This document shows, piece after piece, positions 13,090 through 37,776 of a stretch of 64,000 nucleotides of DNA (within the stretch, counting starts at the first letter, position 1; the number at the start of each line of letters is the position of its first letter). Under the pieces are notes generated by a model, which was given only the letters and a program-made list of their open reading frames with translations, was not told the origin of the DNA and searched no databases. The stretch lies in the IMG/VR virus record IMGVR_UViG_3300037116_000299, positions 62,001-126,000 of that record. One strand, 5' to 3'. The translations under genes were made by a program, and so were the position numbers.

Positions 13090-13580
13090 GCGTGAGGTCG
13101 CTAATCGACCACCACGAGGGAGGAAGGCTCCCGGGCTTTCACCGGGATGCAGGCGACTGAGTATTCAAGTTCAACCCTTACTTGATGCCTTGTTAGGCAG
13201 CAGCGAGATACGCTGCCTCGAATGCCGCGGCCGGAGCCGGGAAAGCGAGGACTTCTGCGGTCTTGCTGGCGAGGTAACCCGTGGTGTTGGCAGTTATTCG
13301 TCGTGGTCTCCCATATCGCGGGCGGCCGACTCGGCGCGTCACCATCTTGTTCCGTATCCCGTCGAAGCCGTGACGGGCCCACCTCAAAGCTCTTGTCCTA
13401 TTGGGACAGTGGTTCAAAAGAGCGTCGAGGTGGACCCGGCGGGAGTCGAACCCGCGTCCGAAACGAAGAAGAAGATGTGTGTCTTTTCACGAGCGTTTTA
13501 GTCCATCCGTTTCCAGCGGACCAAACCCCATTGCTGGGGAAACTTGTTATGTCCACCTCCAGAGAATCGCATCGGGAAAG
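13090..13580 (-). ncRNA. ssrA: tmRNA, circularly permuted two-piece gene (acceptor piece ~13580-13431, spacer 13428-13381, coding piece 13380 to ~13090; outer ends approximate)
   Basis: 3' tmRNA end GGACGCGGGTTCGACTCCCGCCGGGTCCA lies upstream of the 5' end GGGCCCGTCACGGCTTCGACGGG; G3-U70 pair; ATAACT-GCC resume site; tag ends in YLAAA*. Confidence 0.9.
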
Positions 13581-16417: not shown

Positions 16418-18205
16418 TCAAGCTCGGGCCTCAAGTGACTTGGCTAGTATCTCTAACTGTCTGATGAAGACCCGCCGACCTTTCTTCTCTTGCAATCCTG
16501 CGCGTATTTCACGCTGAGTCGCAGCGTAGTCGCCTTGCTCGAAGTGGTATCGGGCCAATTCTAGATGCATTTTCTGCCTTACTTGTCGAGCTAGATCTCG
16601 TCTTGAAGTCTTGGCCGCCATATTCTCAGCACGTTTGTACAACCGGCGGCCTGCCTCATAATCTCCTTCCCTCAGGTGCAGAAGACCTATAGTCGCAATC
16701 AACTCAACATGGTCATCAACGTTCCTTGGCCTGGAGTCTAGAACATGTTTGGCCTGAGCAGTCTGACCTTCCATTAGCAAGAAATAGGATAAGTTGTTGA
16801 TGATGGAGAAAGACTTGGGATATTGAGCATATCCCTCCATCAACAGTTGGATCGCCTTCTCTCCAAAACCAGCTTCACCGTAATAGCTTCCGAGCGATGC
16901 ATAGTTGTCAGCAGAAAGCGGGCCGAACGTTCGTAGTGCTTCAATCTGCAAGATTGCTTCTGGGTAATTATCTTGTTCAGCATAAAAGATGCTTAAGAGT
17001 GAGCGCGTTTCTCGACTAGAAGGGAACAGTTCGACCGCGTGCTCCAATACCTTTATAGCGAGAGGCTTTCTGCTCGTTAGCCCATACACGCGAGCCAAAT
17101 TGTCATACGGGATATGAGAGTTTCTCGGCGCTTTCTCAATTGCAAGCTTCAGTTCGACAACGGCTCTATCAAAAGACTTCTCATGTACGAAAGTTACCGC
17201 GATGTTTGAATGGGCGCGCCCAACCTCATCGCTGGAAAGCGTATCCCCTCCCAACTCGAGAATTCTTACGATTTGCGATCTTGCCATCGAATGCCGCTTC
17301 GATTGCATGTAGGCAGCAGCCAACTGATCACGCGCTTGTATATCCGCTGGATGCCGTTCTACGAAATCTTGCAACATTTCAATCGCTTGATCAGATTTAT
17401 CAAACGTGAGCAAAGTTCCGGCGAGGCTGATCACGGTTGTCGCTGAGTCAGGCGCCAAAGCGAGGGCCGTCTTGAATGCCTTTTCAGCACGAGAATGATC
17501 ACCCTGAAGAGCGTACGCGACTCCCATTGAGTGGTAGAGCTGCGGGCTGCGAAAGTCCAAATGTGAGGCGGCACGAAACTCATTCAATGCACGGCGAAGG
17601 TCCGACCTCTGGAGACACATGATGCCTAAGAGGAAGCGCACATACGGATCGCGTGGACTAAGAGTTGCCGCCTTTGAGAGATGTGTGTTTGCATCTTCGA
17701 AGCGTCCTGCCTGAATTAGGACGTTTGATAATCCGACTTCGACAGCTGGGTTATCAGGGTAGGTAGCAAGCAATTTCTCATACCAGCGTTCCGCCTCAAC
17801 CGTACGTCCCGCTTCGAAATGTAACCGAGCGAGAGTTATGCTGGCCAGGTAGTTTCCTGGGTCAAGTTCCAAGGCGGTTTCTAATTCCTTCAAGGCCTCA
17901 TCGGGTTGACCCTGCTTCAAGAGAGCAATCCCAAGATTTGCATGTGCGCGACCACTACGTGGGAAGCGATCGCTGTGCCGACGCACCGATCGCTCAATAC
18001 CCGCGAGAATATTCTCTGCCGAAGGCGTAGTAGCGCCCACACCCTCTTTCGGCCAATCGATTTCGACAGACTGATCGCCTCTCCGGCTAACCGAGGCGGC
18101 TGTCCCGGGCAGCAACACATTTGTCGAAGGAGCGCTTAGGTCAAATCGCTCGGGGATCGTGCTCTTCTCAAATTCTCGAAGTTCGTCTTTGGAAGCTGTA
18201 TTCAT
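16418..18205 (-). CDS. tetratricopeptide-repeat protein
   Basis: Many TPR units (AHANLGIALLKQGQPDEA; YHSMGVAYALQGDHSRAEKAFKTALALAP); ATGA overlap with kinase. Confidence 0.9.
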   Translation of the reverse strand: MNTASKDELREFEKSTIPERFDLSAPSTNVLLPGTAASVSRRGDQSVEIDWPKEGVGATTPSAENILAGIERSVRRHSDRFPRSGRAHANLGIALLKQGQPDEALKELETALELDPGNYLASITLARLHFEAGRTVEAERWYEKLLATYPDNPAVEVGLSNVLIQAGRFEDANTHLSKAATLSPRDPYVRFLLGIMCLQRSDLRRALNEFRAASHLDFRSPQLYHSMGVAYALQGDHSRAEKAFKTALALAPDSATTVISLAGTLLTFDKSDQAIEMLQDFVERHPADIQARDQLAAAYMQSKRHSMARSQIVRILELGGDTLSSDEVGRAHSNIAVTFVHEKSFDRAVVELKLAIEKAPRNSHIPYDNLARVYGLTSRKPLAIKVLEHAVELFPSSRETRSLLSIFYAEQDNYPEAILQIEALRTFGPLSADNYASLGSYYGEAGFGEKAIQLLMEGYAQYPKSFSIINNLSYFLLMEGQTAQAKHVLDSRPRNVDDHVELIATIGLLHLREGDYEAGRRLYKRAENMAAKTSRRDLARQVRQKMHLELARYHFEQGDYAATQREIRAGLQEKKGRRVFIRQLEILAKSLEARA

Positions 18206-19332
18206 GAATTTGCTCCAGTCGTCAGAGTATTTTGCAGTCGCGACTGCTTCAACTCCGGAACTTTCCGATATGCTTTCTTGCGTTCGATCCAGCGAGCATA
18301 TGCGGCTTGATTCTTGAGGACCACCAGGCACTGATTAATCTGCAGGAACGTGGACGTGCAGTCTTTGGCACGTTGGCGGTAATCCAGTGCAGCAAGCGCC
18401 CTATACATACGATTAAGAATTGGAGCGATTGAGCGCGGCACAGCGGCACCGAAGTCCCGCACATCAGGGAGAGGAAATCGATTGGATATTGACCCAACCC
18501 CCTTATGGAATTCGTTCACTTTGTCGCCAGGAAGAATCGATCCTATAACCATATTGAGATCCATCAACATGTTTCTGCTAAACAGATGAAGGTTCAACGG
18601 AGTACCTGTGAACATCTCGAACAGTACAGCTCCCAAGGCGAACATGTCTCCGGCATATGCAATGTCTGGCAAAATGTCGTGGAGCGACGCCACCATCTCT
18701 AAGGGTGCGTACGTCCAGTCGCCTGGAGGTCCCGTGTACCGCTTTAATGGCCCCCTCGAGTCTGTCAATGAACGGGCTGTACCGAAGTCGGACAACCGTA
18801 GAGTGCCGTCCGTCATGACGAGAAAGTTTGACGGCTTAATGTCGCGATGGACGATTCCTTGCCGATGTATCCTCTGGACCGCTCTGCAAATCGTCCGAAA
18901 GTGAAGAAGTTTATCCGCAGGGTCAATGTCATATGTGTCTAAGACTGTTCCGAGATCGCAAGAAGCCAATTCCATTGCATAGAACCTGAGCGTAACCGGA
19001 AGAATCATCCCCAAAGGATGTTGGAATGGTTCAACTATCTGCTGCATATCCGAATATCGCCGTAAGATGTCTGGCTGATCTTCTAAACCACCCAAAACCT
19101 CGACTTCCCTCGTGAATGATTCGAGCCGATAGGGATCAATAACGGAAGGATCGAAGAACTTGAGCGCCACCTTCTGTCCAGTTACTTGGTCGTGTGCTTC
19201 GAAAAGCAAGGAAAAGGTACCGCCACCGCCGGTGACCCCCAACCGTTTCATGTTGGTGAATCGACCGCAGAGTTCGGTCTTGCTTTCGATCAAACTAAGA
19301 AACGGCTCAGGGTTTGAGCTCGGATTTGCCAT
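18202..19332 (-). CDS. Hanks-type Ser/Thr protein kinase
   Basis: GGGGTFS, VALK, HRDIKPSN, DFG, YAPLE, DMFALG. Confidence 0.93.
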   Translation of the reverse strand: MANPSSNPEPFLSLIESKTELCGRFTNMKRLGVTGGGGTFSLLFEAHDQVTGQKVALKFFDPSVIDPYRLESFTREVEVLGGLEDQPDILRRYSDMQQIVEPFQHPLGMILPVTLRFYAMELASCDLGTVLDTYDIDPADKLLHFRTICRAVQRIHRQGIVHRDIKPSNFLVMTDGTLRLSDFGTARSLTDSRGPLKRYTGPPGDWTYAPLEMVASLHDILPDIAYAGDMFALGAVLFEMFTGTPLNLHLFSRNMLMDLNMVIGSILPGDKVNEFHKGVGSISNRFPLPDVRDFGAAVPRSIAPILNRMYRALAALDYRQRAKDCTSTFLQINQCLVVLKNQAAYARWIERKKAYRKVPELKQSRLQNTLTTGANS

Positions 19333-19615
19333 CCGTCTCTCCAAATTGCCTTCTCAGAAATGCAACGGCATCGTCCGGATGATCTCGAAGAATTCGGAGT
19401 ATATCCTCCGGCACCTTTCCTGCCGATAACAGGAGTGCATCCCGGTCAAACCCAAAATACTCCGAAACTCGATCAACAAGATCCTCTGAGGGGCTGATAG
19501 TCTCGTTTTCCAATTTGCTCAGGTAGGTATAGTTCACCCTCAATTCTGGGGCCAGAGACTTAATGCCTAGCCCACTCTCCAACCGCAATTGGCGCAGAAT
19601 CTTCCCGAACTTCAT
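19307..19615 (-). CDS. XRE-family HTH regulator
   Basis: FGKILRQLR...LA....NYTYLSKLEN...PS...L...AGKVP. Confidence 0.85.
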   Translation of the reverse strand: MKFGKILRQLRLESGLGIKSLAPELRVNYTYLSKLENETISPSEDLVDRVSEYFGFDRDALLLSAGKVPEDILRILRDHPDDAVAFLRRQFGETDGKSELKP

Positions 19616-19782: not shown

Positions 19783-19858
19783 CGAATCCCTGGAGAGGAT
19801 CGAACTCTCGACCACCGACGCCACAGGTCGGCGCTCTACCAGCTGAGCTACGGGCAAC
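19783..19858 (-). pseudogene. tRNA-His(GTG) with destroyed 3' acceptor strand
   Basis: G-1, D, anticodon (CCGAC-CTGTGGC-GTCGG) and T arms intact; 3' strand is CAGGGAT instead of CGGGCAA; no CCA. Confidence 0.75.
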
Positions 19859-22370: not shown

Positions 22371-22739
22371 TTACCACCAGACACTCACCTTGACGATGGA
22401 GGTCTGGGGATTGAAGTGATGCTTACGGAGGAACTGCTTGTACTCCTCGATCGCTTCTTCGACGGTGGGCTTGACACCCTTGCGCGCTTCGATGAACTTG
22501 GTGACGGCTGCATGGTCGCCGCCTCCGAAGGTAGTGCCCAGTGAGAAGATGCGCTCTTCGAAGAAGGCGCGCTGTTCGGCCGTGACCTTCGCCGGATCGA
22601 TGTCATCGATGCTGATGCTGTGGGTCAGGTCATTACCGGTGCCCCGCGTCAGCATGAACATCAGGTGATAAATCGGTGGGGTCACATCGTCGTCGTACAC
22701 GTCAAAGCAGGGTTCAGCCTTCATTACTTTCCGTCCCAT
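22371..22739 (-). CDS. hypothetical protein
   Basis: ORF overlapping the SpoU gene. Confidence 0.55.
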   Translation of the reverse strand: MGRKVMKAEPCFDVYDDDVTPPIYHLMFMLTRGTGNDLTHSISIDDIDPAKVTAEQRAFFEERIFSLGTTFGGGDHAAVTKFIEARKGVKPTVEEAIEEYKQFLRKHHFNPQTSIVKVSVWW

Positions 22740-23317
22740 CCAAGTACATCAATCTCGCTGGTATAGCCACGCGTCTCGTGCAGCATCTGACTCAGCGGAA
22801 CAATCTCTTCCACGCCGGAAAGCTGGCGTTTCATACGACGATCACCCAGGATCAGGTTCACAGCCTGCGACAGATTGAGGCAATGGTGTGTCGGGATGTG
22901 AACGAACTGATGGCAGAAGCGGCGAATCACCTGCTTCACGCTTCCATCTTCCGGCCCGAACACGTACACCGCATTCTCAGGATGCTCGAAGGTAGTCAAT
23001 GGCACGCTGTTCTCGACCAACTCGATGCACACCGGGATCACTCCCTCGGGAAGCAGATCGAACGGACGCTCCGTTCGCTGCCAGTGCACGTCCTTGTAGC
23101 CCTTCATGCGTTCTTCCCGCGGCAGACGATCCATCTGCTCAGGAACAACGCGGCTTCCGGTCCATAGCAAAGTCGGAACACCCCAGCAGGAGCAAGCTCG
23201 GATCACACCGGCCATGTTGTGCGAGTATTTCGGGTTGTTGAGGATCACGGCAGGCACGTCGACACGCGTCTTGGCCTTGGGGATGTTCGGGTTCACTGCA
23301 TTCGCTAACATGTTCAC
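22724..23317 (-). CDS. SpoU/TrmH-family (SPOUT) RNA methyltransferase
   Basis: NPKYSHNMAGVIRAC, YVFGPEDGS, IP...CLNLSQAV. Confidence 0.88.
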   Translation of the reverse strand: MNMLANAVNPNIPKAKTRVDVPAVILNNPKYSHNMAGVIRACSCWGVPTLLWTGSRVVPEQMDRLPREERMKGYKDVHWQRTERPFDLLPEGVIPVCIELVENSVPLTTFEHPENAVYVFGPEDGSVKQVIRRFCHQFVHIPTHHCLNLSQAVNLILGDRRMKRQLSGVEEIVPLSQMLHETRGYTSEIDVLGWDGK

Positions 23318-24045
23318 TCCGGGTAACAGACGGTGTTGTAGGACTTCAGGATCAGTTTGTGGCTGTTCCCTCCGGCCGTATAGTGCGTGATCGAACAGTT
23401 CTTGACGTCGTCGTTGGCATCAACATCGAGATACTGTTCCTCGGTCCAGCGCTCCAGCAGCTTGCGGAGCACCAGCACCACAACGCTGTGGGTGACCACC
23501 AGGACCTTCTCGCCGGCGTAGTCGCGGCTCAGGGTGCCCAGAATGCTGTGAAGCCGCATGCCGACGTCCGGGCGCGACTCCCCGCCAGGTGGGCGATACC
23601 AATACTTGCCCTCTTTGTTCCGCCGGGTGACTTCCTCCGGATACTTCGCCTGCAGACCCTCACGGGTCAGCCCGTCGAAGATGCCGAACTCGATCTCGCG
23701 CAGCCGTTCGTCCTCGACGACCTTGATGCCCGGCCGAAAGCGCTCGAGGCCCGCCTTGTTCTCTACGCCCAGGCCCTTGAGGATCTGGTCAGTTGTCTGC
23801 TTGGTGCGCAGATAGGGCGAGGTGAGCACGACGTCGAACGGGTAGAGGTTGCGCAGCTCCACACCTACGTGGAGCGCCTGGCCGAAGCCCAGGGGCGTCA
23901 GGGGTGTGTCCTGGTCCCGGATGTCGCCCACGTAGGACTTCAGCAGGCCTTTGGCCTTCGCCTGTTCCTTCTCTACGTTGCGCTGGGACTGGCCGTGGCG
24001 AACAATCACCAGGTCGGTGGGCCATTTCATGTCGGTAGGTAACAT
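23314..24045 (-). CDS. histidine phosphatase (phosphoglycerate mutase family)
   Basis: IVRHGQS, SPYLRT, LREIEFG, PPGGES, VVTH. Confidence 0.92.
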   Translation of the reverse strand: MLPTDMKWPTDLVIVRHGQSQRNVEKEQAKAKGLLKSYVGDIRDQDTPLTPLGFGQALHVGVELRNLYPFDVVLTSPYLRTKQTTDQILKGLGVENKAGLERFRPGIKVVEDERLREIEFGIFDGLTREGLQAKYPEEVTRRNKEGKYWYRPPGGESRPDVGMRLHSILGTLSRDYAGEKVLVVTHSVVVLVLRKLLERWTEEQYLDVDANDDVKNCSITHYTAGGNSHKLILKSYNTVCYPE

Positions 24046-24067
24046 TCAATTCCTCGGGTAAAGCGGT

Positions 24068-24153
24068 TGGCAGGGGTGACAGGATTCGAACCTGCAGTGA
24101 CTTGCGTCGGCGGTTTTGGAGACCGCTGGGCCGAACCGTTGCCCCTCACCCCT
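24068..24153 (-). tRNA. tRNA-Trp(CCA) with long variable arm
   Basis: AGGGGTG/CACCCCT, G73, CCA; GCGGT-CTCCAAA-ACCGC; variable arm GAC-GCAA-GTC. Confidence 0.82.
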
Positions 24154-24402
24154 GTGGGTTGGTGACCGATACTTGATACCGCGCCTCGGATCAGGACGCC
24201 ATTCACCATTACTGCCATTTTCAACACATGCTGAAACAGAACAATCGGGTGAAACACCTAAGAAGGGAGGCGGGAGTTGCGCCCGCCGGTCGCGCCAACC
24301 CGTTCTGCTCAACGGACAGCCTGTAGCAACCATCGGAGTAGCAGCTCCGGTTGCATGCGTTGGACCGATACTTAGAGTCGCCTCGGTCTCCAGGGCGCTG
24401 CT

Positions 24403-24479
24403 TGGTGGCGGTGCGTGGACTTGAACCACGGACCTCGACGTTATGAGTGTCGCGCTCTAACCAGCTGAGCTACACCGCC
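24403..24479 (-). tRNA. tRNA(CAT), Met or Ile2
   Basis: GGCGGTG/CACCGCC acceptor, loop CTCATAA, CCA. Confidence 0.9.
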
Positions 24480-24681
24480 GAACTTGGTGGAGCCTGTTGC
24501 CATCCTCCCGCAGGTGACGGCCCGCGCGGCCCCATGGAGGTTCAAAGAGGTGCAGGGAGGGGTGTTCTCACGTCCCAAGGGATCTACACCGTGCGAGCGT
24601 CAAAGACGTGAGTGTGTCACGACTCGAACAGAAAGATCCTTACCCTGCGTGATGTGAGCACCACTCAGTGCTCACTAAGAT

Positions 24682-24757
24682 TGGCTGACGAGGCAGGGGT
24701 CGAACCTGCGACCAACGCCTTAACAGGGCGCCGCTCTACCAACTGAGCTACTCGTCA
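24682..24757 (-). tRNA. tRNA-Asn(GTT)
   Basis: TGACGAG/CTCGTCA, G73, GCGCC-CTGTTAA-GGCGT, CCA. Confidence 0.92.
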
Positions 24758-24767
24758 TCGTGGTGCT

Positions 24768-24800
24768 AAAACGACAAAACCCTCGGGGTTAGCCGAGGGT
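24768..24800 (-). terminator. intrinsic terminator/attenuator upstream of the tRNA cluster
   Basis: CCCTCGG-CTAACC-CCGAGGG followed by TTTTGTCGTTTT. Confidence 0.65.
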
Positions 24801-24933
24801 GCGTAGTCACGATCTTGCGATCGACTACGGATCCCCGGCGTCACCATTCATCGGATTCCACTGCGCGGATTGGGTCACGGGGATCATCTTCACTGTCTAG
24901 TATAGAAGATCACAGCCCCATCGCATAATCCAG

Positions 24934-25194
24934 CTAGCTCGGACGTTCCTTGAGCGTCTTGACCGTCGCCTCCAGGGCGTAGCCGAAGCGACGATCGTTC
25001 ATGTCCAGACCCTGATCGGCCAGGTTCATGAGGAACCACTCCAGCGTGTCCGCAGACTCGTAGCTGATCTCGGTGTCCAGGTTCGACGAGATGGTGGCCA
25101 CCTTGTTCGGCGTGCCCGGCTCGTGATCCTTGGTTCGGTCGTTGACACCGATCTTGACTCCGAACGGCAGGTCGTAACTGATCAACTCACTCAT
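24934..25194 (-). CDS. hypothetical protein
   Basis: ORF in gene train. Confidence 0.55.
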   Translation of the reverse strand: MSELISYDLPFGVKIGVNDRTKDHEPGTPNKVATISSNLDTEISYESADTLEWFLMNLADQGLDMNDRRFGYALEATVKTLKERPS

Positions 25195-25823
25195 TTGCTG
25201 ACTTGCTCCTTCATTCCGATTTCATCCTGCCAGTCCGGTCCGGAAAGGTAGTCTTCGAGCCAGGTCCGCTGATCCCCACGAGCCTGCGGGGATGCCATCG
25301 CGGTAACCCGAAGAATGCACCAATTGGGATGGTCAGCGTAATGCTGCGTTCCCACGCCAATGGCCATGCTCTCGGAGTAAACTCCAGTTTCCCGGGTCAC
25401 CTTCGATTGAAAGAACACCAGCTTGTTATTGGCGATGTCCCGCTTGATCAGCCAGGTCTGGGGATCCGGGTAATTGACGACCAGCGCCTGCTTGGCCGCT
25501 TTCTCGATCGCATACTGTAGGGCATCCGAGAACTGTTCGTGCAGGGTCTCCCTGTTCGATGGGAAGTCCACACGAGATCCGGTGGGATCGTACAGATCGA
25601 CTCCGCCGCCTTCACGCTCGATCTCGAGTGTGATGCCCCAGTCTTCAGGCAGGCACTGAGCGCATCCCTGAATGATGGCATGCAAGCGGTCTGGGTCGCC
25701 GCTCTGGCGGACCAGGCGGCCGTGCTTGGAATGCGGCGCCGGAATGACTGTTGGCCATCCGTCGGCGATACCGGGAGCGAACGCACGTTCTTCAGTCCTA
25801 TACCAGGTTTGTTCTGACATCAT
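25191..25823 (-). CDS. hypothetical protein
   Basis: ORF in gene train. Confidence 0.55.
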   Translation of the reverse strand: MMSEQTWYRTEERAFAPGIADGWPTVIPAPHSKHGRLVRQSGDPDRLHAIIQGCAQCLPEDWGITLEIEREGGGVDLYDPTGSRVDFPSNRETLHEQFSDALQYAIEKAAKQALVVNYPDPQTWLIKRDIANNKLVFFQSKVTRETGVYSESMAIGVGTQHYADHPNWCILRVTAMASPQARGDQRTWLEDYLSGPDWQDEIGMKEQVSK

Positions 25824-26071
25824 TTCCTCGATCCGCCCAACGGTTTGCCATCACGGCCAAGCGGCGCCGGATAAGGCATTTCCATGTAATAGTTGATCTC
25901 GTCAAACAGCACGCCGAGATCGGAACCGTCCACATCAGAGATCAGGGCACTATCCTCGCCGTCGATCGTGATGTGCTTGATGGTCAGAACCCGGCTGCAC
26001 AGTTCCTCATCCGGGTCATGCCAGAACACCTTGTCGCCAGGCTTCAGCTTTGCCACTTGGTCTGCGGTCAT
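25820..26071 (-). CDS. hypothetical phage protein
   Basis: LKPGDKVFWHDPDEELCSR motif. Confidence 0.55.
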   Translation of the reverse strand: MTADQVAKLKPGDKVFWHDPDEELCSRVLTIKHITIDGEDSALISDVDGSDLGVLFDEINYYMEMPYPAPLGRDGKPLGGSRK

Positions 26072-26073
26072 GG

Positions 26074-26298
26074 CTACTCTTCCTCGTCTTCCTCGACGTC
26101 TTCGTCGAGGGTGGTGCCAAAGCTGTCCACCAGATCGGTCAGGTCCACGTTGTTGATGGCCTCGGACCGAAGGTAGGTGATCGCGGCATTCTGCATCTCG
26201 ACGCCGGCATCGTGCTCGGCATCGCCGGAGTCGCCATTCTTGACCCGGTTGTATACGACGATCGCTTCGAGCAGGTCCTTCGCTAACTCGTTACTCAT
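26074..26298 (-). CDS. small acidic protein
   Basis: ORF with SD and acidic tail. Confidence 0.55.
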   Translation of the reverse strand: MSNELAKDLLEAIVVYNRVKNGDSGDAEHDAGVEMQNAAITYLRSEAINNVDLTDLVDSFGTTLDEDVEEDEEE

Positions 26299-26312
26299 CT
26301 CATTCTCCTAGT

Positions 26313-26436
26313 GGGGCCGGGCAGGATTCGAACCTGCGACCTACGGGTTTGCTCGGCTTTAGCCAGTTGCTGGTTGACCCAACGTGTGGATTGCCTTCAG
26401 TTGGCCCGCTGTTCTAACCGCTGAACTACCGGCCCC
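26313..26436 (-). ncRNA. tRNA-like RNA with a 57-nt structured insert replacing the anticodon loop
   Basis: Intact acceptor, D, anticodon-stem and T arms; insert at 26348-26404; no encoded CCA. Confidence 0.8.
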
Positions 26437-26441
26437 ATGAA

Positions 26442-28783
26442 CTACTTGATCTCCAAGACTCGCGGAGACCATTTCCCTTTCAGTCTCTGCAACTCGTTGA
26501 TCACTTGAATCTGTTCGAAGATGTATCCCAGCCTCGCGTCGGTAAACGTCGAGCAAGGACGGTCAGTGTTGTGAACATAGTCGGCCAATTCCTTGATCGA
26601 CTCCACTGTGTGGGCACGCATGAGTTGAACAGCACGTTCCATCTAGGTTCGCCCCAGAAGCTCAGCAAGGCTGAGTACATGGATCATGCCCACTTGATAG
26701 ACCCGGCCGCAGCGTTCGCAGCTGCAATGCAGGCTGGCGTGGATCCGATTGGTTCCGTCCACGGCAACGAACTTGGTGCTGAAGTAGCCTTTGCCTTCCT
26801 GATGGCCGTAGCCGAACGCCGGACGATGGCCGACTACAGAACAGATCAACTTGTCGATCATGAGTGCGTGTACCCGTCTTTCTCGATACCGATGAACATC
26901 CCGTTTACCCAGGTCAGTCCGCAGTAGTCTCCGTATGATTGAACGCGGCCAAAGAATGCATGGCGATCAACAGACCCATCCGGATTGCGATCGAATAACT
27001 TGCCGATTGCCTCGACTTGCTCAGGCGTCATCCACTCCGGGATGACGATGTGCGGTTCAGATGCCATTAGTCCTCCAGGATGTAGCGTTCGACTGGGAAA
27101 GGTTTGCGCACCGGTCCCTGCCGGATTACAGGAGCCAGCGCCCGGCTCAGCGGCTTGCAGCGGTCCGTGGTGCGGACCTGCGTGTTATGCATATTCAGCA
27201 ACCACTTTCCGACCGCGCTGGACCACAGTATCAGCCAGTACCAGGCCAGCCCGATGCCCAGGATCCACGCGATCGCGTAGGCGTCATTACGAATCTCATT
27301 CATGCGGCCCTCCTCGGCGGCAATGGAAATACCTGATCTTCTTCCACCAGGCCGGATGGGATCTGGCGCTTCACGCACTCCGCGTGATAGGCCACAACCA
27401 TCTCTTTGAACTCGGGCGTGAACGGCCCTCCGTCTCGATACGTGTCAGCGATGCCGCCGCGACCGTTGAACAGCGCCTGCAACTGCTTCGTGGATCGATT
27501 GGACATCGAGCTGAGGACTGCCACGCTATTCTCCTTGAGTCCCGAGGGGCCCACCGCCCTTGACGTGTTCGCTGGCCATTGGAGGCCAGCTAGCCTTGCT
27601 TGCGGTGGGCGCGACGGAGACGGTTGCAAGATCATCAGCCCCAAAGGACCTCATAGCTCTTGCGGGCTATCTTGTGTGGGTTGCAACGTAGGTACTGCCC
27701 AGCATGAGCCCGATTACCAACAGCAGACCCCAGCGGCCGCGCAGCTCCCGGTTGCCGTTATCGTTGATGAAGAACACCTGTCGGTCATACCAGGCGTCCG
27801 GCCCGCGATAGCGGATCGGTGCAATCCAGTTCCAGAGCTTCATGTCTCCTACTTCCCGAAGATGAACCAGGCGATTACGAAACCGACCAGGCATCCACTT
27901 CCCCAGATGTTCCAGAACCTACTCATTCTTCCTCCCACTTCCACACGCTAGCCGGTGCTTCCGGCGGATTTGTAGCCTGATCCAGAGCGTCGGCGATCTG
28001 CGCCCAGCGCTCGTCTGACGCGGGCGGCGTGTTGGTTGCCCGGATCAGCAGCTCCTGCGCAACCTTGAGCGCAGCGATCAACTTAGGTGTTGCGGCAATC
28101 GCATGGCAGTCCGCCCACTTAGTGGGATAGTTCTCATCGGCGCCGATGTCGAAGTTCCGCGTGTGGTTCAGGTGCGGATGCCCTTCGTATGGTTTGGCCG
28201 CTACGAAGAACTTGCCGGCGCCGGGAACGCCGTCCGGGATGATCAGGACGTACCAGTCGCCCGGGGTAATGCCTTCGATCTTCTCTTTAGCCGGCATGGA
28301 CTGCTCCACAGGGGTTCGACTCGGCGGTGAGTGCTGTCTTCTCGGTGAACTCTGTCTGCCCGAGTTTGTAAAGACCCACCGTGTCTGTGCTGTAGCCGAC
28401 GATCTGGGTCAGCCAGTCGGTCAGGGCGCGCAACACCGGGCCATTGCCATGCTCGAGATACCAGTCGCGCATGGCCTTCAACACAACGGCGGGATTGGTC
28501 GGCGGATAGTCCTTGAACAGGACAGTCCAGATCACCTTGATGGTCTCGTCTTCGAGCTTCACTGCTTTTGCTTCTGCTACCTCTGACATCTCATCTCCCA
28601 GGGTCAGATCAACTGAACCAGTTGCACCAGAAACGCTGTGGCGCTGATAAACAATGTCGTGAACAACAGCAGGAACAGAAACAGCAGCTCCCGCGTCGGC
28701 GCTTTGTCGGCGACCCAGCACAATCCCGCCAGACAGAGGATCGCTATCACGAACGATCCGATGATTCCAAGTGCCTGCTTCAT
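26442..28783 (-). other. train of about nine short hypothetical genes (26442-26642, 26643-26861, 26858-27067, 27067-27303, 27300-27644, 27667-27843, 27923-28309, 28287-28589, 28604-28783)
   Basis: Abutting or overlapping start-stop junctions, many with SD sequences. Confidence 0.5.
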
Positions 28784-33004: not shown

Positions 33005-34213
33005 TTATGCTGCGATGAGGTGAGTGGGCTTGTCCTCGCCCTGGCCATCGATGTAGAAGACGTCCCGGCCGTGAGGCCGAACGATCTTCCAGAGAGCCTC
33101 ATGGGCCTCCCAGATCCGGTTGTCCATCATCATCATGGCGATCGGGCCCAGGACCATGTCCCGTTCGATCACCAGGCGATAGAACTCCCGGTCATCCTTG
33201 ACCTCGGCGCGCAATGGTGTAATCCAGGCCAGAACATCCAGCGCCTTACAGATCTGGAAGTGAAAAGCCTGATAGAGTCTCCTCTGCCATTCCTCGATCC
33301 AGGTCTTGAAGTGAGGCGGCAACTGCGACTGCAGGTGCGTCGGCCTCAACCATGGCTTGAGCGGATCGCCCATCTGTTCCCAGATCATCTGGGGCGTCAC
33401 ATTGGTGACCAGGCGATGCAGCCGGAGATACTCCTCGAGCTTGATCTTCACCTTGAGCGGGGGTTGTCCGCCGCGGCGGACTGAGACCACATAACCCTCA
33501 CGGGTCAGGTCCTTATCCTGCCTGCAGGCCATCAGAGTCTTACCCGAGAAGGCAGGCACTACGCGGCACCATGGTTTCCCCTTGGCGCCTGCGTTCAGCT
33601 CCTTCCAGAGGCCTTCCAGTTGCCAGTGGCGCAACTCGTCACCGGTGTCGTTCATGACGGTCGTCAAAAGCACCAGGGCCTCGTAGTCGTAAGGAATCAC
33701 GATGCGGAGATGCTTGGCGACGATCTCAACGATCAAGGTCAATCCCTTGGGGATGCACTCGACCATGCCATACTTGACGAACTTCTGGAACTTGGCAGTC
33801 GCCCAGATCGCGCCGTCCGAGGTGAACGACCCGCGGGTGGCCACACCCCAGTGCTCCTTGTAGTTCCAGACGATGCCCATCTGGCCATCGATTTTGTCGG
33901 TGAACTCCAGCTCGTTGCCGTAGGCCCGGGCAATGCCCAGGACGAACTCCTCTGAGAATTCCAATAGTCCTTGGCCAACGATGTCGACCGTCTGGCCCAG
34001 GTTGAAGAACTTCGGTTGCGGACGCGCGATGACCTCATCGGTATCATCGATGATCAGACCGCGGCAGAAGCAGATCTCCGTGCTCCAACGCTCATCGATC
34101 GTAGCCTTATGGGTATAGTTGAAGATCCGTAACGGCAGAGTCGGGTGGTGTTGAATACCGATGTAACCATTGGCGATCTCCTGCTTGAGTGCGTCCGTCC
34201 AAATCATCTTCAT
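33005..34213 (-). CDS. T4 Rnl1-like RNA ligase
   Basis: CRGLIID, ARPQPKFFN, motif I KIDG, ATRGSFTS, EGYVV, KVKIK..EY.RLH. Confidence 0.9.
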   Translation of the reverse strand: MKMIWTDALKQEIANGYIGIQHHPTLPLRIFNYTHKATIDERWSTEICFCRGLIIDDTDEVIARPQPKFFNLGQTVDIVGQGLLEFSEEFVLGIARAYGNELEFTDKIDGQMGIVWNYKEHWGVATRGSFTSDGAIWATAKFQKFVKYGMVECIPKGLTLIVEIVAKHLRIVIPYDYEALVLLTTVMNDTGDELRHWQLEGLWKELNAGAKGKPWCRVVPAFSGKTLMACRQDKDLTREGYVVSVRRGGQPPLKVKIKLEEYLRLHRLVTNVTPQMIWEQMGDPLKPWLRPTHLQSQLPPHFKTWIEEWQRRLYQAFHFQICKALDVLAWITPLRAEVKDDREFYRLVIERDMVLGPIAMMMMDNRIWEAHEALWKIVRPHGRDVFYIDGQGEDKPTHLIAA

Positions 34214-34977
34214 ATTCGTGTCTGCCCCTTTGCGTGGCGAATGACCTTGTTCCCGTACGGGCTCATCTTCTGTTCCTGAGCTGTCAGGTCGTACTTGTGA
34301 TCCTTCCAGGCCTCGCATGCATGAACAGTTTCAGCATGAACATGGCCATCCGGGATGTCGCCAAACCAACGCCTCACGTGGCACCCACAGGCCAGTCGGG
34401 CCTCAATGCACATCGTCACGACTCGGCGAGTGGCCTTGATCTTGAGCTTGGGACGACGCGGACACTTGTTCAAATGCTTGAACAGAGGTGTCCTGTCTAA
34501 GACCGCACCGCAGTGCGGGCAGTGCTCTCGGCAGCCCTTCATCAGGCGGCCGCGGGTGTGGTGTTGATGGTGTCCAGCATGCCGCCGAACCGCTCCATCA
34601 GCGTCTGGGGACGCGTGCCGCGGGATGCAGCTGCTACCAGTCGGAGTTCGATTGCACCCTGGTCAAAGGTCACGATCTCGTCAGCAGACGAGGGTTGGGG
34701 TGCCATGTTGTGTTCGAGATACTCTTCACGAGCCTCCGCAGAGGCGAATCCAGCGAAACTACGGTTGTCCATGTTGCTCCTTCGGTCGTCGGTGCCAGAG
34801 CCTCAATATCCATGCAGGAATGAAGGCTCCTTTCTTGTGTGCAGATACGCGAAGCGGTATGTGCAGGTCATCGGCGATCGCTCGGATCGCCGCGTAAGCG
34901 GGATGCTCCCGGAATTCCTTGATCGCCGATTCTTCGCTATCGGCGATGCCCTCGATGAGGATCATGCGGATCTCCAT
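34210..34977 (-). other. three short hypothetical genes (34210-34542 Zn-finger-like, 34542-34772, 34759-34977)
   Basis: Coupled ORFs between RNA ligase and CCA enzyme. Confidence 0.5.
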
Positions 34978-36266
34978 TAGGAGACCGCCATTGGCGAGTT
35001 CCGAAGCTGTGTCGTTACAAACGCCACGGCTTCCTCACGCGTTTTGATCTTCTCTTCGAGCTGTTCGTCCTCGAGATTGTGCAGAACGAAGCCGAACGCA
35101 GGACTGGGCTTATAACCCAGGGCAATCAAGTCATCGCCGTTGAGCAGTACCTTGGGATAAGTCCCAGGCAAACCCGCCGCGCTCATGAACTGATCCACAC
35201 GATGAAATGCCCGTTGGCCCCCGGTGTAAGCCGGCCGCGCGAAGTAATCGTGCAGCGCCACCTGACGAATCAGGTCATAGTCCGCATCGCGGCGATAGCG
35301 CCGCTGTGCTGCCAGGTTCCAGTCCGGGATGCAGCTCCAAACCTGTGCCTTGGTGATGATGTTAGTGATCTGGGCAGCATCCGCCGTCGAGAACTTCAGA
35401 CCCAGCAGCGCGTTCTTCCGTGCCGTGGTGCCGAGATCCAGGAACAGCAGAGACAATGCGATCAGGACGTGATCCTTGACGGCCTGACCGTAGGCGCTGG
35501 ACCAGGAGATTGCAGGCATCTGGTTGAGGCGACGCAGAACCCTTCCGAAGTCGGTATCTAGCTCCGGCAGCAGGTAGTCCAGCAGGTTCGAGAGCAGAAG
35601 CAGTTCCAGGGCGCGTACGGCCCGGGGCTGGCTCAGCATCGCGATCAGCTCCTCGCGCTTCCGTTCTCCGCTGATCTCAGCGAGTAAGGGAGCATTGACG
35701 CGCATCGCGCCCCAGGTGGGCTCGTCAATCTGGAAGTCCAGCCGGGCGGCAAATCGGATTGCCCGGAGTAAACGCAGGGCGTCTTCTTCAAAGCGCCGGT
35801 TGGGATCCCCGATGCAGCGGATCTTCTTGTGCGCGATGTCCATGACTCCGCCGGTGAGATCCACCAGCTCACCGGTCTCGATGTCCAGGGCCAGGGCATT
35901 GATGGTGAAGTCCCGCCGCTGAACGTCCTCGGCCAGGGTCTTGCTGTAGACCACAGCGTCAGGGTGACGGTGGTCAGAATAGGCGTCCTCGGCGCGGAAG
36001 GTGGCGACCTCGAAACTCTCCTCATTGATCGTGACGAGAACGACGCCAAACTTAGCGCCTACGGGCTTGGAGCAATCTGGGAAGATTGCCATGACCTCGT
36101 CAGGCACTGCGTTGGTGACGATGTCATAGTCTTTGGGGAGATTGGCCAGGATACGATCTCGAACGCAACCGCCGATCAGGTAGGCTTCTTTGCCGGCCTT
36201 GCGTAGGTGGTAGATCAGCTTCTCGACCGCGACCATACGGACGGTCGGTTGCATTCTGAGGATCAT
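34977..36266 (-). CDS. cca: CCA-adding tRNA nucleotidyltransferase (class II)
   Basis: GGCVRD, KDYDI, EVATFR, RRDFTINA, EDALRLLRAIRF. Confidence 0.92.
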   Translation of the reverse strand: MILRMQPTVRMVAVEKLIYHLRKAGKEAYLIGGCVRDRILANLPKDYDIVTNAVPDEVMAIFPDCSKPVGAKFGVVLVTINEESFEVATFRAEDAYSDHRHPDAVVYSKTLAEDVQRRDFTINALALDIETGELVDLTGGVMDIAHKKIRCIGDPNRRFEEDALRLLRAIRFAARLDFQIDEPTWGAMRVNAPLLAEISGERKREELIAMLSQPRAVRALELLLLSNLLDYLLPELDTDFGRVLRRLNQMPAISWSSAYGQAVKDHVLIALSLLFLDLGTTARKNALLGLKFSTADAAQITNIITKAQVWSCIPDWNLAAQRRYRRDADYDLIRQVALHDYFARPAYTGGQRAFHRVDQFMSAAGLPGTYPKVLLNGDDLIALGYKPSPAFGFVLHNLEDEQLEEKIKTREEAVAFVTTQLRNSPMAVS

Positions 36267-36561
36267 GATTGTTTCACTTTCGGACGAGACATCATCGTTC
36301 GCCGGCAGGGACCGATGAACCAGGACCGGTCGAGTTTGTAGATCAACATGCCGTTTTCACGACAGCATAACTTACGCTCCACAATGGCTCCGTACCCGAG
36401 GCTTCGCGCGAGCCGCTTGGCTCGCTGAATCGTTCGGACTGTACGGAGAGGCGCGTTAGCGCCAGGTGAGAAGACGTCATAACGAAGGGAGCGTTTTGAT
36501 TCTCTGGACAATTCAACTTCCCTAACTGGCGCCGGGGATTAGCCGACGCCTTGGATTTGAC

Positions 36562-37776
36562 CTACTCGAGGTCGGTATCGGAGCAGCGGACGGGAATGAC
36601 CCGTACGCCATGTTCACGCCACATCTGAACCACACAGAGCCTGTCGTCAATCGCAAATGCGATCTCCGCTTTGCAGGCCAGCATCTGTTCGAGGATCGTG
36701 GCTTTCACATCGACATCGGTGATGTGGGCCGGTTCTTTGCGCATGAACAAGTGGTCGAACGGCACCATGTGTTTGTCCAGCGACTCCAGGGTCTCGCGAC
36801 CACAGCAGTTCATGTCGCGGCCGCTGACCAGGATGATCATGAAGCCCAGGGCACTGAGAGAGTGCAGCCAGTTCAGGATGATCTCGACCGGTTCGTCGTT
36901 GATGCACTCCTGCAGGAACTTGTAGTGATCCTTCTTGGCTTTGCCTGTGCCCTGGCAGATCCCGCATGGCATAGCGCCCGGGTCGTCCAATGCCTTCCCG
37001 GTGCCATAACATGGAGTGCAGATCCCGCTCACCAGGTGCTTCCGGTGATCCAGGTTGAACAGCGTGCCGTCGAGGTCACAGACCACAGCCGGATGGCCGC
37101 TCAGATCCAGGCGCCCGCTCAGAAGGTACTGCCGCTCGATCACCGGGCGGCCGACCTGTCTGCCTTCGAAGCGCATGGCGTCGCGGGCAATGCAATCCGC
37201 GATCGGGGTGTCGATGAACTTCACCTCGGCCTTGCGGAAGCACAGCTCTTCGGCGTAATCGAGCCACATCTGCCGGTGACCCGGGGTCAGGTTGGTGTCG
37301 TCGATGATGACATCCCTACCCTGTTCCCGCGCCGCACGGACAATGGCCTTCTCAGCCTCGATGATGAACTTCTCCTTCGAGGCAGCCCAACGAGGGATGG
37401 TCATCCGACGGATGTCGTCCCGGTTGATCCGGACCGCATGCCCGTTGTCCTGGATGTGCTTGAACGCAACCGTGGACTTGCCGCTCCCGGAAGGGCCGGA
37501 CAGGATGGTCATTCGGCCAATTGGAGTCGTGCCGACCTTCAGGAAGATCGCCTTCTCTGCCTCATGTGTCAGCTCACCGCCAACCAGTCTAAGACCAGTC
37601 GCACCATCGGGTAACACGTGACGGATGCCTTCCGGCGTCATCACGTATTCGTACGCCCCGTAGGGCTCGCCGATGGCTTTTACGTCGAGGAACGTGCCGC
37701 CAAAGTAGTCCGGGATCTCGATCCGGCCGGTCTTGAATGTTGCTGGTCTCATTACTCGTACCTCGTTGCTGTTCAT
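36562..37776 (-). CDS. pseT: polynucleotide 5'-kinase/3'-phosphatase (T4 PseT-like) with inserted Zn finger
   Basis: GPSGSGKST, NRDDIR, IIDDTNL; HAD motifs DLDGT, SGR and IDDR. Confidence 0.88.
   Translation of the reverse strand: MNSNEVRVMRPATFKTGRIEIPDYFGGTFLDVKAIGEPYGAYEYVMTPEGIRHVLPDGATGLRLVGGELTHEAEKAIFLKVGTTPIGRMTILSGPSGSGKSTVAFKHIQDNGHAVRINRDDIRRMTIPRWAASKEKFIIEAEKAIVRAAREQGRDVIIDDTNLTPGHRQMWLDYAEELCFRKAEVKFIDTPIADCIARDAMRFEGRQVGRPVIERQYLLSGRLDLSGHPAVVCDLDGTLFNLDHRKHLVSGICTPCYGTGKALDDPGAMPCGICQGTGKAKKDHYKFLQECINDEPVEIILNWLHSLSALGFMIILVSGRDMNCCGRETLESLDKHMVPFDHLFMRKEPAHITDVDVKATILEQMLACKAEIAFAIDDRLCVVQMWREHGVRVIPVRCSDTDLE

What the first reader, a model, noticed from the sequence alone, without database searches (positions are those of the whole stretch)
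26313..26436. tRNA whose anticodon loop is replaced by a 57-nt pseudoknot-like module
Seen: GGGCCGG-TA-GTTC-AGCGGTTA-GAAC-A-GCGGG-[CCAACTGAAGGCAATCCACACGTTGGGTCAACCAGCAACTGGCTAAAGCCGAGCAAA]-CCCGT-AGGTC-GCAGG-TTCGAAT-CCTGC-CCGGCCC. The insert has CCAAC/GTTGG, a CCAG-CAA-CTGG hairpin and a possible GGC/GCC loop pairing. It is far too short for a group I intron. No single excision restores a loop with U33, although CC+GCAAA would give a GCA anticodon with C33. Inference: either a mini-intron processed by the encoded PNK and Rnl1, an embedded ribozyme or aptamer, or a non-decoding tRNA mimic that decoys anticodon nucleases. The intact body argues for selection.
Basis: partly seen in the sequence, partly recalled or inferred. 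Interest (0 to 1): 0.75.

Follow-up and report, generated by a model that had tools for sequence, protein, structure and literature searches.

The report
Phage tRNA-like gene lacking an anticodon loop
A large soil/peat phage carries a gene with a complete tRNA body, but 57 unrelated bases sit where the anticodon loop should be, so it cannot read codons; it looks like a "pseudo-tRNA" of the kind annotated in other big phages, and nothing shows that the extra piece is an intron, a ribozyme or a folded module.

Summary
The gene is real. Window 26313-26436, minus strand, matches the Rfam tRNA model at 55.8 bits, within the range of the phage's ordinary tRNAs. All arms are intact, and 57 nt (26348-26404) replace the 7-nt anticodon loop.

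The "pseudoknot-like module" is not supported.

It is not a recognisable intron:
- No single excision gives a loop with U33.
- There is no bulge-helix-bulge motif, no Rfam intron, ribozyme or aptamer hit, and no splicing endonuclease or RtcB gene.
- A metatranscriptome contig spans it unspliced.

All copies found, in about five strain variants of one phage species, are identical. That is not unusual: 27% of 124-nt windows nearby are also invariant. Contigs with 70%-identical homologues of the downstream gene hold no tRNA.

The phage does encode Rnl1, a PNK-like kinase and a CCA-adding enzyme. Unlike 6 of the 7 other tRNAs in the window, this gene encodes no CCA.

My best reading is a non-decoding, tRNA-derived RNA, cut out of its operon transcript like a tRNA. 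It is probably a disabled tRNA gene, less probably a selected mimic. The closest analogues are the KVP40 "tRNA-Pseudo" genes. Interest is low to moderate.

The parts
26313..26436 (-). Whole tRNA-like gene, from G-1 (26436) to discriminator C73 (26313). No CCA is encoded.
   Evidence: Rfam RF00005 at 55.8 bits; ARAGORN -i drawing; sequence.
26429..26435 (-). Acceptor stem, 5' strand (GGGCCGG). It pairs with 26314-26320.
26411..26426 (-). D-arm: GUUC / AGCGGUUA / GAAC, with G18 G19.
26405..26409 (-). Anticodon stem, 5' strand (GCGGG).
26348..26404 (-). 57-nt insert in place of the 7-nt anticodon loop. It has no U33 solution, no fold beyond chance, and no similarity elsewhere.
26343..26347 (-). 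Anticodon stem, 3' strand (CCCGU).
26321..26342 (-). Variable loop AGGUC (26338-26342) and T-arm GCAGG / UUCGAAU / CCUGC (26321-26337).
26314..26320 (-). Acceptor stem, 3' strand (CCGGCCC).
26442..26642 (-). Upstream 66-aa ORF. Its stop codon ends 5 nt before G-1. No Pfam hit.
26074..26309 (-). Downstream 74-aa ORF (26074-26298) with its AGGAGA ribosome-binding site (26304-26309), which starts 4 nt after the tRNA-like gene. The gene therefore lies inside an operon.
24779..24800 (-). First good intrinsic-terminator-like site downstream on the minus strand. No sigma-70-like promoter was found in 24000-28500.
33005..34318 (-). Context: Rnl1-type RNA ligase (PF09511).
35817..36185 (-). Context: PolyA_pol / CCA-adding enzyme domain match (PF01743, E 2e-40) inside a 459-aa frame.
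37150..37512 (-). Context: AAA_33 (PNK-like kinase) domain match (PF13671, E 1e-18) inside a 420-aa frame.

Best explanation
This is a tRNA-derived gene that can no longer decode. It is transcribed as part of the minus-strand operon of small genes. The intact acceptor, D and T arms let it fold into the tRNA L-shape. By inference, RNase P and the 3' tRNA-processing enzymes cut it out of the transcript, which also separates the upstream and downstream cistrons, and a CCA end could be added by the phage's or the host's CCA-adding enzyme. The anticodon stem does not close a 7-nt loop. It carries 57 nt with no U-turn base, no anticodon in any usable register and no demonstrable structure, so the RNA cannot act on the ribosome. 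Most probably it is a tRNA gene disabled by a replacement in its anticodon loop, what annotators call a pseudo-tRNA. It would be recent enough that the rest of the body is still perfect. Shown here: the anatomy, the lack of any splicing solution, the lack of fold or family signal, the operon context, and the restriction to one phage species. Inferred: transcription, processing, and the absence of a selected function.
For: - The body scores 55.8 bits, inside the range of the window's other tRNAs (48.9-69.5).
- No single excision and no internal arm gives a loop with U33 and R37. By contrast, 18 of 29 other over-long tRNA genes in the fetched viral contigs become canonical after one excision, where the chance rate is 1-2%.
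- There is no BHB motif, while the control was positive. There are no other Rfam hits, no tRNA_int_endo, RtcB or Ro60, and no spliced form in four runs, with an RNA-library contig crossing the insert unspliced.
- The insert's fold and helices are at chance level. The insert has no copy or complement in the phage genome, and no similar sequence in the phage database.
- The gene occurs only in near-identical strains: L001/L019, L002/L018, L181, L191 and L192.
- Contigs carrying 70-71%-identical homologues of the downstream gene have a different ORF upstream and no tRNA.
- No CCA is encoded, whereas 6 of the 7 other tRNAs in the window encode it.
- The same genome holds another degraded-looking tRNA: the His gene has a poorly paired acceptor stem.
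Against: - The replacement is surgically exact. Both strands of the anticodon stem and every conserved tertiary position survive, which a random disabling event would seldom give.
- Phage genomes usually shed useless DNA.
- Comparable over-long tRNA-like genes are conserved across 44 Vibrio phage records, and T4 keeps two tRNA-like stable RNAs. Non-decoding tRNA-like RNAs can therefore be retained.
- The population data cannot tell neutrality from constraint.
- Logan contigs of metatranscriptomes cannot show small mature RNAs, so a spliced product is not excluded.
Confidence: 0.45

Rival explanations
1. A selected non-decoding tRNA mimic. The same molecule, processed in the same way, is kept because the tRNA body itself is useful. 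It could be a decoy or sponge for host enzymes that recognise the acceptor end or elbow of tRNAs: nucleotidyltransferase or acetyltransferase toxins, or nucleases acting on the acceptor or variable loop. It could also be a built-in RNase P/Z cleavage signal that uncouples the flanking cistrons.
For: The tRNA body and anticodon stem are preserved exactly. G-1:C73 and all tertiary positions are intact. The gene sits exactly between a stop codon and a ribosome-binding site. The phage invests in tRNA maintenance, with Rnl1, a PNK-like kinase, a CCA-adding enzyme and a SpoU methylase beside the tRNA cluster. There are analogues: KVP40 tRNA-Pseudo-5 also has an intact stem and a 46-nt loop that no excision resolves, and it is conserved in related Vibrio phages. 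T4 has rnaC and rnaD.
Against: The element is confined to one phage species. It is absent from all eight fetched contigs that carry more distant homologues (48-71% identity) of the downstream gene. There is no sign of constraint beyond the local background.
Confidence: 0.3
2. An intron-containing tRNA. The 57 nt, or about 50 of them, are removed by an unknown endonuclease, and the halves are healed and sealed by the phage PNK-like kinase and Rnl1. This would give, for example, a loop CCGCAAA (anticodon GCA with C33).
For: The PNK-like kinase, Rnl1 and a CCA-adding enzyme are encoded nearby. Small inserts that one excision does resolve are common in tRNA genes of other large phages.
Against: Every possible product lacks U33. 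There is no BHB and no group I or other intron model hit. There is no splicing endonuclease or RtcB. No spliced joint was seen in any run. A covariance model of the T4-like phage insert family does not find this insert. The discriminator is C73, and my recollection is that U73 is the main Cys identity element.
Confidence: 0.1
3. The insert is a small self-cleaving ribozyme or a ligand- or protein-binding aptamer, displayed on a tRNA scaffold.
For: It lies at the tip of a stable scaffold. Its length of 57 nt is within the range of small ribozymes and aptamers.
Against: No Rfam family matches, even at E up to 10 in a 251-nt search. Folding energy and helix content are at chance level. There are no homologues to support any structure.
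Confidence: 0.05

Closest known systems
KVP40 'tRNA-Pseudo-5' (NC_005083 181101-181213) and its neighbours Pseudo-3 and Pseudo-4, with their copies in related Vibrio phages
   Same: These are genes of 113-124 nt in a large phage's tRNA region. They have a full cloverleaf body and about 45-55 nt in the anticodon region, and they are annotated as pseudo or mistyped tRNAs. Pseudo-5, like this gene, keeps a perfect 5-bp anticodon stem and cannot be made canonical by one excision. It also has G-1:C73.
   Different: The T4-like inserts share a covarying hairpin (C-G closing pair, loop UGAYAA) followed by C(A/U)GCAA, and they recur in 44 records. The insert here has only loose word resemblances (CUGA, CAGCAAC) and is not found by the model built from that family. 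It occurs in one phage species only.
Phage T4 rnaC and rnaD (species 1 and 2 stable RNAs)
   Same: They are encoded at the end of the tRNA cluster. rnaC has a tRNA-type T-arm and an acceptor-like stem. From my own knowledge, they are processed together with the tRNAs, are stable, and have no known function. That makes them the classic precedent for non-decoding tRNA-like RNAs in big phages.
   Different: They depart much further from tRNA: the best Rfam hit is 17.5 bits to tRNA-Sec. There is no sequence similarity to this gene.
Intron-containing tRNA genes: archaeal/eukaryal bulge-helix-bulge introns, and bacterial group I introns in anticodon loops
   Same: The interruption sits in the anticodon arm of an otherwise normal tRNA gene.
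   Different: Here there is no BHB, although the control L178/L179 CAU tRNA shows one. At 57 nt the insert is far below group I size, and no Intron_gpI hit was found. No excision restores a loop.
Bacterial CAU-anticodon tRNAs (Ile2/Met type) of Alphaproteobacteria and Acidobacteriota
   Same: These are the nearest ordinary tRNAs I found. The acceptor start GGGCC, the D-arm and the T-arm are nearly identical.
   Different: Pair 6:67 is swapped on both strands in a compensating way. The discriminator is C rather than A, and the anticodon stem and variable loop differ. No trace of the CUCAUAA loop remains.
YrlA / bacterial Y RNA (tRNA-like module bound by Ro60)
   Same: A non-coding RNA with a tRNA-like domain.
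   Different: The match is 17.3 bits against a gathering score of 69. The topology is different, and the phage has no Ro60/TROVE gene.

Membership tests
tRNA (Rfam RF00005) | Cloverleaf with acceptor, D and T arms and a score above the gathering threshold | tested here: met
   55.8 bits against a gathering score of 29; all four stems are standard pairs.
tRNA (functional decoder) | A 7-nt anticodon loop with U33 and a purine at position 37, directly or after removal of one intervening sequence | tested here: not met
   Enumerating all single excisions and all internal 5-7-5 arms gives no product with U33.
tRNA (functional decoder) | A 3' CCA end, encoded as in this phage's other tRNAs | tested here: not met
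   The 3' flank after C73 reads ACU. Six of the 7 other tRNAs in the window encode CCA. Addition after transcription is possible.
Group I intron in a tRNA anticodon loop | A catalytic core (P3-P8), about 200 nt or more, with a match to Intron_gpI | tested here: not met
   The insert is 57 nt, and there is no such hit at E up to 10.
Archaeal/eukaryal-type tRNA intron | A bulge-helix-bulge motif at the splice sites | tested here: not met
   The scripted search finds no hBHBh' in this gene, while the control L178 shows them.
Archaeal/eukaryal-type tRNA intron | A splicing endonuclease available | tested here: not met
   PF01974 is absent from the 214-kb genome. The host is unknown, so a host enzyme could not be tested.
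RNA-repair-dependent splicing (PNK + Rnl1) | Healing and sealing enzymes encoded | tested here: met
   PF09511 (Rnl1), PF13671 (kinase) and PF01743 (CCA-adding enzyme) are present.
RNA-repair-dependent splicing (PNK + Rnl1) | A spliced RNA product exists | tested here: inconclusive
   No joint appears in two RNA and two DNA runs, and an unspliced RNA-library contig spans the insert. Assembled contigs cannot show small mature RNAs.
T4-like phage tRNA insert family (defined here, alignment A1, model R1) | A covarying 5-bp hairpin closed by C-G with loop UGAYAA, then C(A/U)GCAA | tested here: not met
   Searching with R1 over the whole window, filters off, gives no hit at 26348-26404 even at E 10. 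Only loose word matches exist.
Known small ribozymes, riboswitches and aptamers (Rfam 15) | A covariance-model match | tested here: not met
   There is nothing but tRNA below E 0.3 on 26250-26500.
YrlA / Y RNA | A model match, and an Ro60 partner | tested here: not met
   17.3 bits against 69; no TROVE domain.
Stable tRNA-like phage RNAs (T4 rnaC/rnaD type) | Accumulates as a stable, RNase P-processed RNA during infection | not testable with these tools
   This needs a Northern blot or small-RNA sequencing of infected cells, and the phage is known only from metagenomes.

The most novel reading that the evidence does not exclude
The gene is not a relic. It would be one instance of an unrecognised class in large phages: tRNA bodies that carry a 45-60-nt cargo in the anticodon arm. 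Such RNAs would either be spliced by a repair-type pathway (an endonuclease plus PNK and Rnl1) or act as non-decoding mimics that soak up tRNA-directed host defences.
Probability: 0.12. Interest if true: 0.75.

Novelty: new member of a known kind. Interest (0 to 1): 0.3.

Why it matters
If it is only a disabled tRNA gene, the point is mainly practical. Default tRNA finders miss it, and intron-tolerant ones give it a meaningless "Cys" label. It also shows tRNA turnover in a 214-kb peat phage. If instead it, or the better-supported insert-bearing tRNA genes of T4-like phages noticed along the way, proves functional, it would bear on a 50-year-old open question: why large phages keep tRNA-like RNAs that do not decode. 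It would also bear on how phage RNA-repair enzymes are used.

Tried and rejected
**Searches for divergent homologues**
- I ran five pattern scans and one protein-based scan of IMG/VR, one metagenome scan, two scans of GTDB genomes, and DNA searches of the phage database. They returned only identical copies, so no covariation analysis was possible.
- The shared word GAGCAAA next to the stem, seen here and in L006, led to no family.

**Ideas dropped after a control or a test**
- The 8th acceptor pair (-1:73) looked enriched among over-long tRNA genes (12 of 14 families by eye). A control showed 48% Watson-Crick pairing in 528 ordinary phage tRNAs against 57% in the long ones, so I dropped the idea.
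- The resemblance to the T4-like insert family (CUGA..., GGCAAUC, CAGCAAC, AACUGGCU) did not survive a covariance-model test.
- Insert invariance as evidence of selection was rejected. 27% of 124-nt windows are invariant, and the gene sits in one of several invariant stretches of 250-274 nt.
- Complementarity of the insert to the phage genome (an antisense or sponge idea) gave only chance-level matches of 12 nt or less.
- No sigma-70-like promoter lies in or near the insert.

**Isotype of origin**
- The body is closest to CAU tRNAs, but the D-arm also resembles Asp and Gly tRNAs. I left this undecided.

**Literature**
- Four successful searches (a fifth call errored) found no description of such inserts in phage tRNAs.

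Full report
**What is there**

The minus strand of window 26313-26436 encodes a tRNA-shaped RNA. Rfam's tRNA model matches 26313-26435 at 55.8 bits. That lies in the middle of the range of the seven ordinary tRNAs in the window (48.9-69.5 bits). The alignment shows a 7-bp acceptor stem, a 4-bp D-stem with the G18 G19 loop, a 5-bp anticodon stem (GCGGG/CCCGU), a 5-nt variable loop and a standard T-arm. It bridges 56 nt where the loop should be. Read directly, the insert is 57 nt, at 26348-26404. G26436 can pair with the discriminator C26313, giving G-1:C73. ARAGORN at default settings does not report the gene. With introns allowed it forces a "Cys(aca)" call with a 50-nt intron and C33, which has no biological meaning.

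**Is the insert a structured module?**

I found no evidence that it is. The insert alone folds at -12.6 kcal/mol, and dinucleotide shuffles average -11.7 (z -0.35). With the closing stem it folds at -19.0 against -17.0 (z -0.75), and 46 of 200 shuffles do as well. In shuffles, 55% contain a perfect 5-bp helix and 42% contain as many helices of 4 bp or more. The cloverleaf itself accounts for the modest z of -2.15 for the whole RNA. No Rfam family other than tRNA comes near significance on 26250-26500. The best other match is YrlA at 17.3 bits, against a threshold of 69.

**Is it an intron?**

- I enumerated every single excision between the D-arm and the T-arm, and every internal 5-7-5 arm. 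None gives U33.
- A scripted search finds no bulge-helix-bulge motif. The same script finds them in an archaeal-type control, the L178 CAU tRNA with an intron.
- The 214-kb genome has no tRNA splicing endonuclease, no RtcB and no Ro60.
- It does have an Rnl1 ligase (window 33005-34318), a CCA-adding enzyme (domain at about 35817-36185) and a PNK-like kinase (domain at about 37150-37512). The healing and sealing half of a repair pathway is therefore present, but no cutting activity or splice solution is.
- I laid two metatranscriptome and two metagenome runs on 23900-27400. No joint removes the insert, and a 731-nt contig from an RNA library crosses it colinearly with no differences. That contig could be contaminating DNA or the operon precursor, and assembled contigs cannot show small mature RNAs. 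This is weak evidence, but it points the same way.

**Distribution and constraint**

The genome is an IMG/VR virus record of 214,300 bp, 58.9% G+C and about 99% complete. It is held by many peat, permafrost and soil runs. Its Rnl1 is only about 30% identical to the nearest phage homologues.

The tRNA-like gene turned up only in near-identical contigs: L001/L019, L002/L018, L181, L191 and L192. These strains differ from the window at 4.4% of sites over 4.2 kb, counting the union of their variant sites. None has a change in the 124 nt. However, the variants are clustered. The gene lies in a 274-nt invariant stretch, two other stretches of 250-260 nt exist, and 27% of all 124-nt windows are invariant. 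The data therefore cannot show selection.

Homologues of the downstream 74-aa gene at 70-71% identity lie on short contigs. There, a different 84-aa or 132-aa ORF, with no counterpart in this phage, sits upstream, and no tRNA is present. The element is lineage-specific as far as can be seen.

**Context**

The gene begins 5 nt after the stop of a 66-aa ORF and ends 4 nt before the AGGAGA ribosome-binding site of the 74-aa ORF. No sigma-70-like promoter lies within 24000-28500, and the next good terminator on this strand is at 24779-24800. The gene is therefore most likely co-transcribed with its neighbours and would have to be cut out by the tRNA-processing enzymes. That step is inferred, not shown.

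Six of the seven other tRNAs in the window encode CCA, and this gene does not. The body is closest to CAU-anticodon tRNAs of Alphaproteobacteria and Acidobacteriota. It differs from them by a compensated swap at pair 6:67 and by a C73 discriminator. The anticodon stem and variable loop also differ, and the D-arm is shared with Asp and Gly tRNAs, so the isotype of origin is undecided. The insert has no copy or meaningful complement in the phage genome and no similarity in the phage database.

**Comparison with other over-long tRNA genes**

Pattern scans of IMG/VR show that tRNA genes with 40-60 extra nucleotides in the anticodon arm are not rare in large phages. In KVP40 they are annotated "tRNA-Pseudo-3/4/5", and they recur in 44 Vibrio phage records.

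Of 29 such genes in the fetched viral loci, 18 become canonical tRNAs after one excision, often between positions 28 and 29. The chance expectation is 1-2%. Those are real intervening sequences. Their inserts share a covarying hairpin and a C(A/U)GCAA motif.

The gene in this window is not one of them. It cannot be resolved by excision, and a covariance model of that family does not find it anywhere in the window. Its nearest analogue in form is KVP40 Pseudo-5, which has an intact stem and an unresolvable 46-nt loop. Its nearest analogues in concept are T4's rnaC and rnaD.

One tempting feature, the extra -1:73 pair, proved to be common in ordinary phage tRNAs as well.

**Verdict**

My best explanation is a tRNA-derived, non-decoding RNA. 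It is most probably a tRNA gene disabled by a replacement of its anticodon loop, and still processed like a tRNA (confidence 0.45). The main rival is that the same molecule is kept as a mimic or a processing signal (0.3). A spliced mini-intron (0.1) and a ribozyme or aptamer (0.05) have evidence against them. It is a new member of a known kind, phage pseudo-tRNA or tRNA-like genes with an expanded anticodon loop. Interest is 0.3.

Noticed in passing
L177 (KVP40, NC_005083 178549-183749) 1909-2027, 2296-2417, 2537-2649, 2660-2783, 4334-4449; also L144, L160, L013, L037, L096, L165, L176: T4-like and other large phages carry many tRNA genes of 105-125 nt. KVP40 annotates them as tRNA-Pseudo. In the fetched viral loci, 18 of 29 become canonical tRNAs (Asn, Asp, His, Gln and others) after one excision, often between positions 28 and 29 of the anticodon stem. 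The inserts share a covarying hairpin (C-G closing pair, loop UGAYAA) followed by C(A/U)GCAA. This looks like an undescribed small tRNA intron or insert family.
   Followed up: partly
window 13102-13521 (-): A circularly permuted (two-piece) tmRNA gene in a phage: Rfam tmRNA_permuted at 68.7 bits, and ARAGORN reports a tag peptide ending in AAYLAAA. From my own knowledge, two-piece tmRNAs are typical of Alphaproteobacteria and a few other groups, so this hints at the host.
   Followed up: no
window 19784-19857 (-): The tRNA-His(GUG) call has a poorly paired acceptor stem (about 4 of 7 pairs by eye) and no encoded CCA, unlike the other tRNAs. It may be another decaying tRNA gene.
   Followed up: partly
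window 24068-24153 (-): tRNA-Trp(CCA) is 86 nt long and has an unusually long variable region for a Trp tRNA.
   Followed up: no
window 22724-24045 (-), 33005-37512 (-): A set of tRNA-maintenance genes surrounds the tRNA cluster: a SpoU-type 2'-O-methyltransferase (22724-23317), a histidine phosphatase (23314-24045), Rnl1, a CCA-adding enzyme and a PNK-like kinase.
   Followed up: partly
window 16418-19344 (-): A 637-aa TPR-repeat protein and a 380-aa Ser/Thr protein kinase are encoded just upstream of the tRNA region.
   Followed up: no
L178 90-176 (-), L179 851-937 (-): Metagenome contigs carry a CAU tRNA with a 35-nt intron lying between loop position 38 and the 3' strand of the anticodon stem, plus clear bulge-helix-bulge motifs (archaeal type). 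I used it as the positive control.
   Followed up: partly
viral loci L004-L176: In 528 ordinary-length phage tRNA genes, the base before position 1 forms a Watson-Crick pair with the discriminator in 48% of cases, about twice the random expectation. I have no explanation, and it could be partly an artefact of my parser.
   Followed up: no
L006 420-535 (-): Another viral contig (80 kb) has a tRNA (45.5 bits) with a 50-nt loop. My BHB script also returns strict hBHBh' candidates in this gene, so it may be an archaeal-virus tRNA intron.
   Followed up: partly
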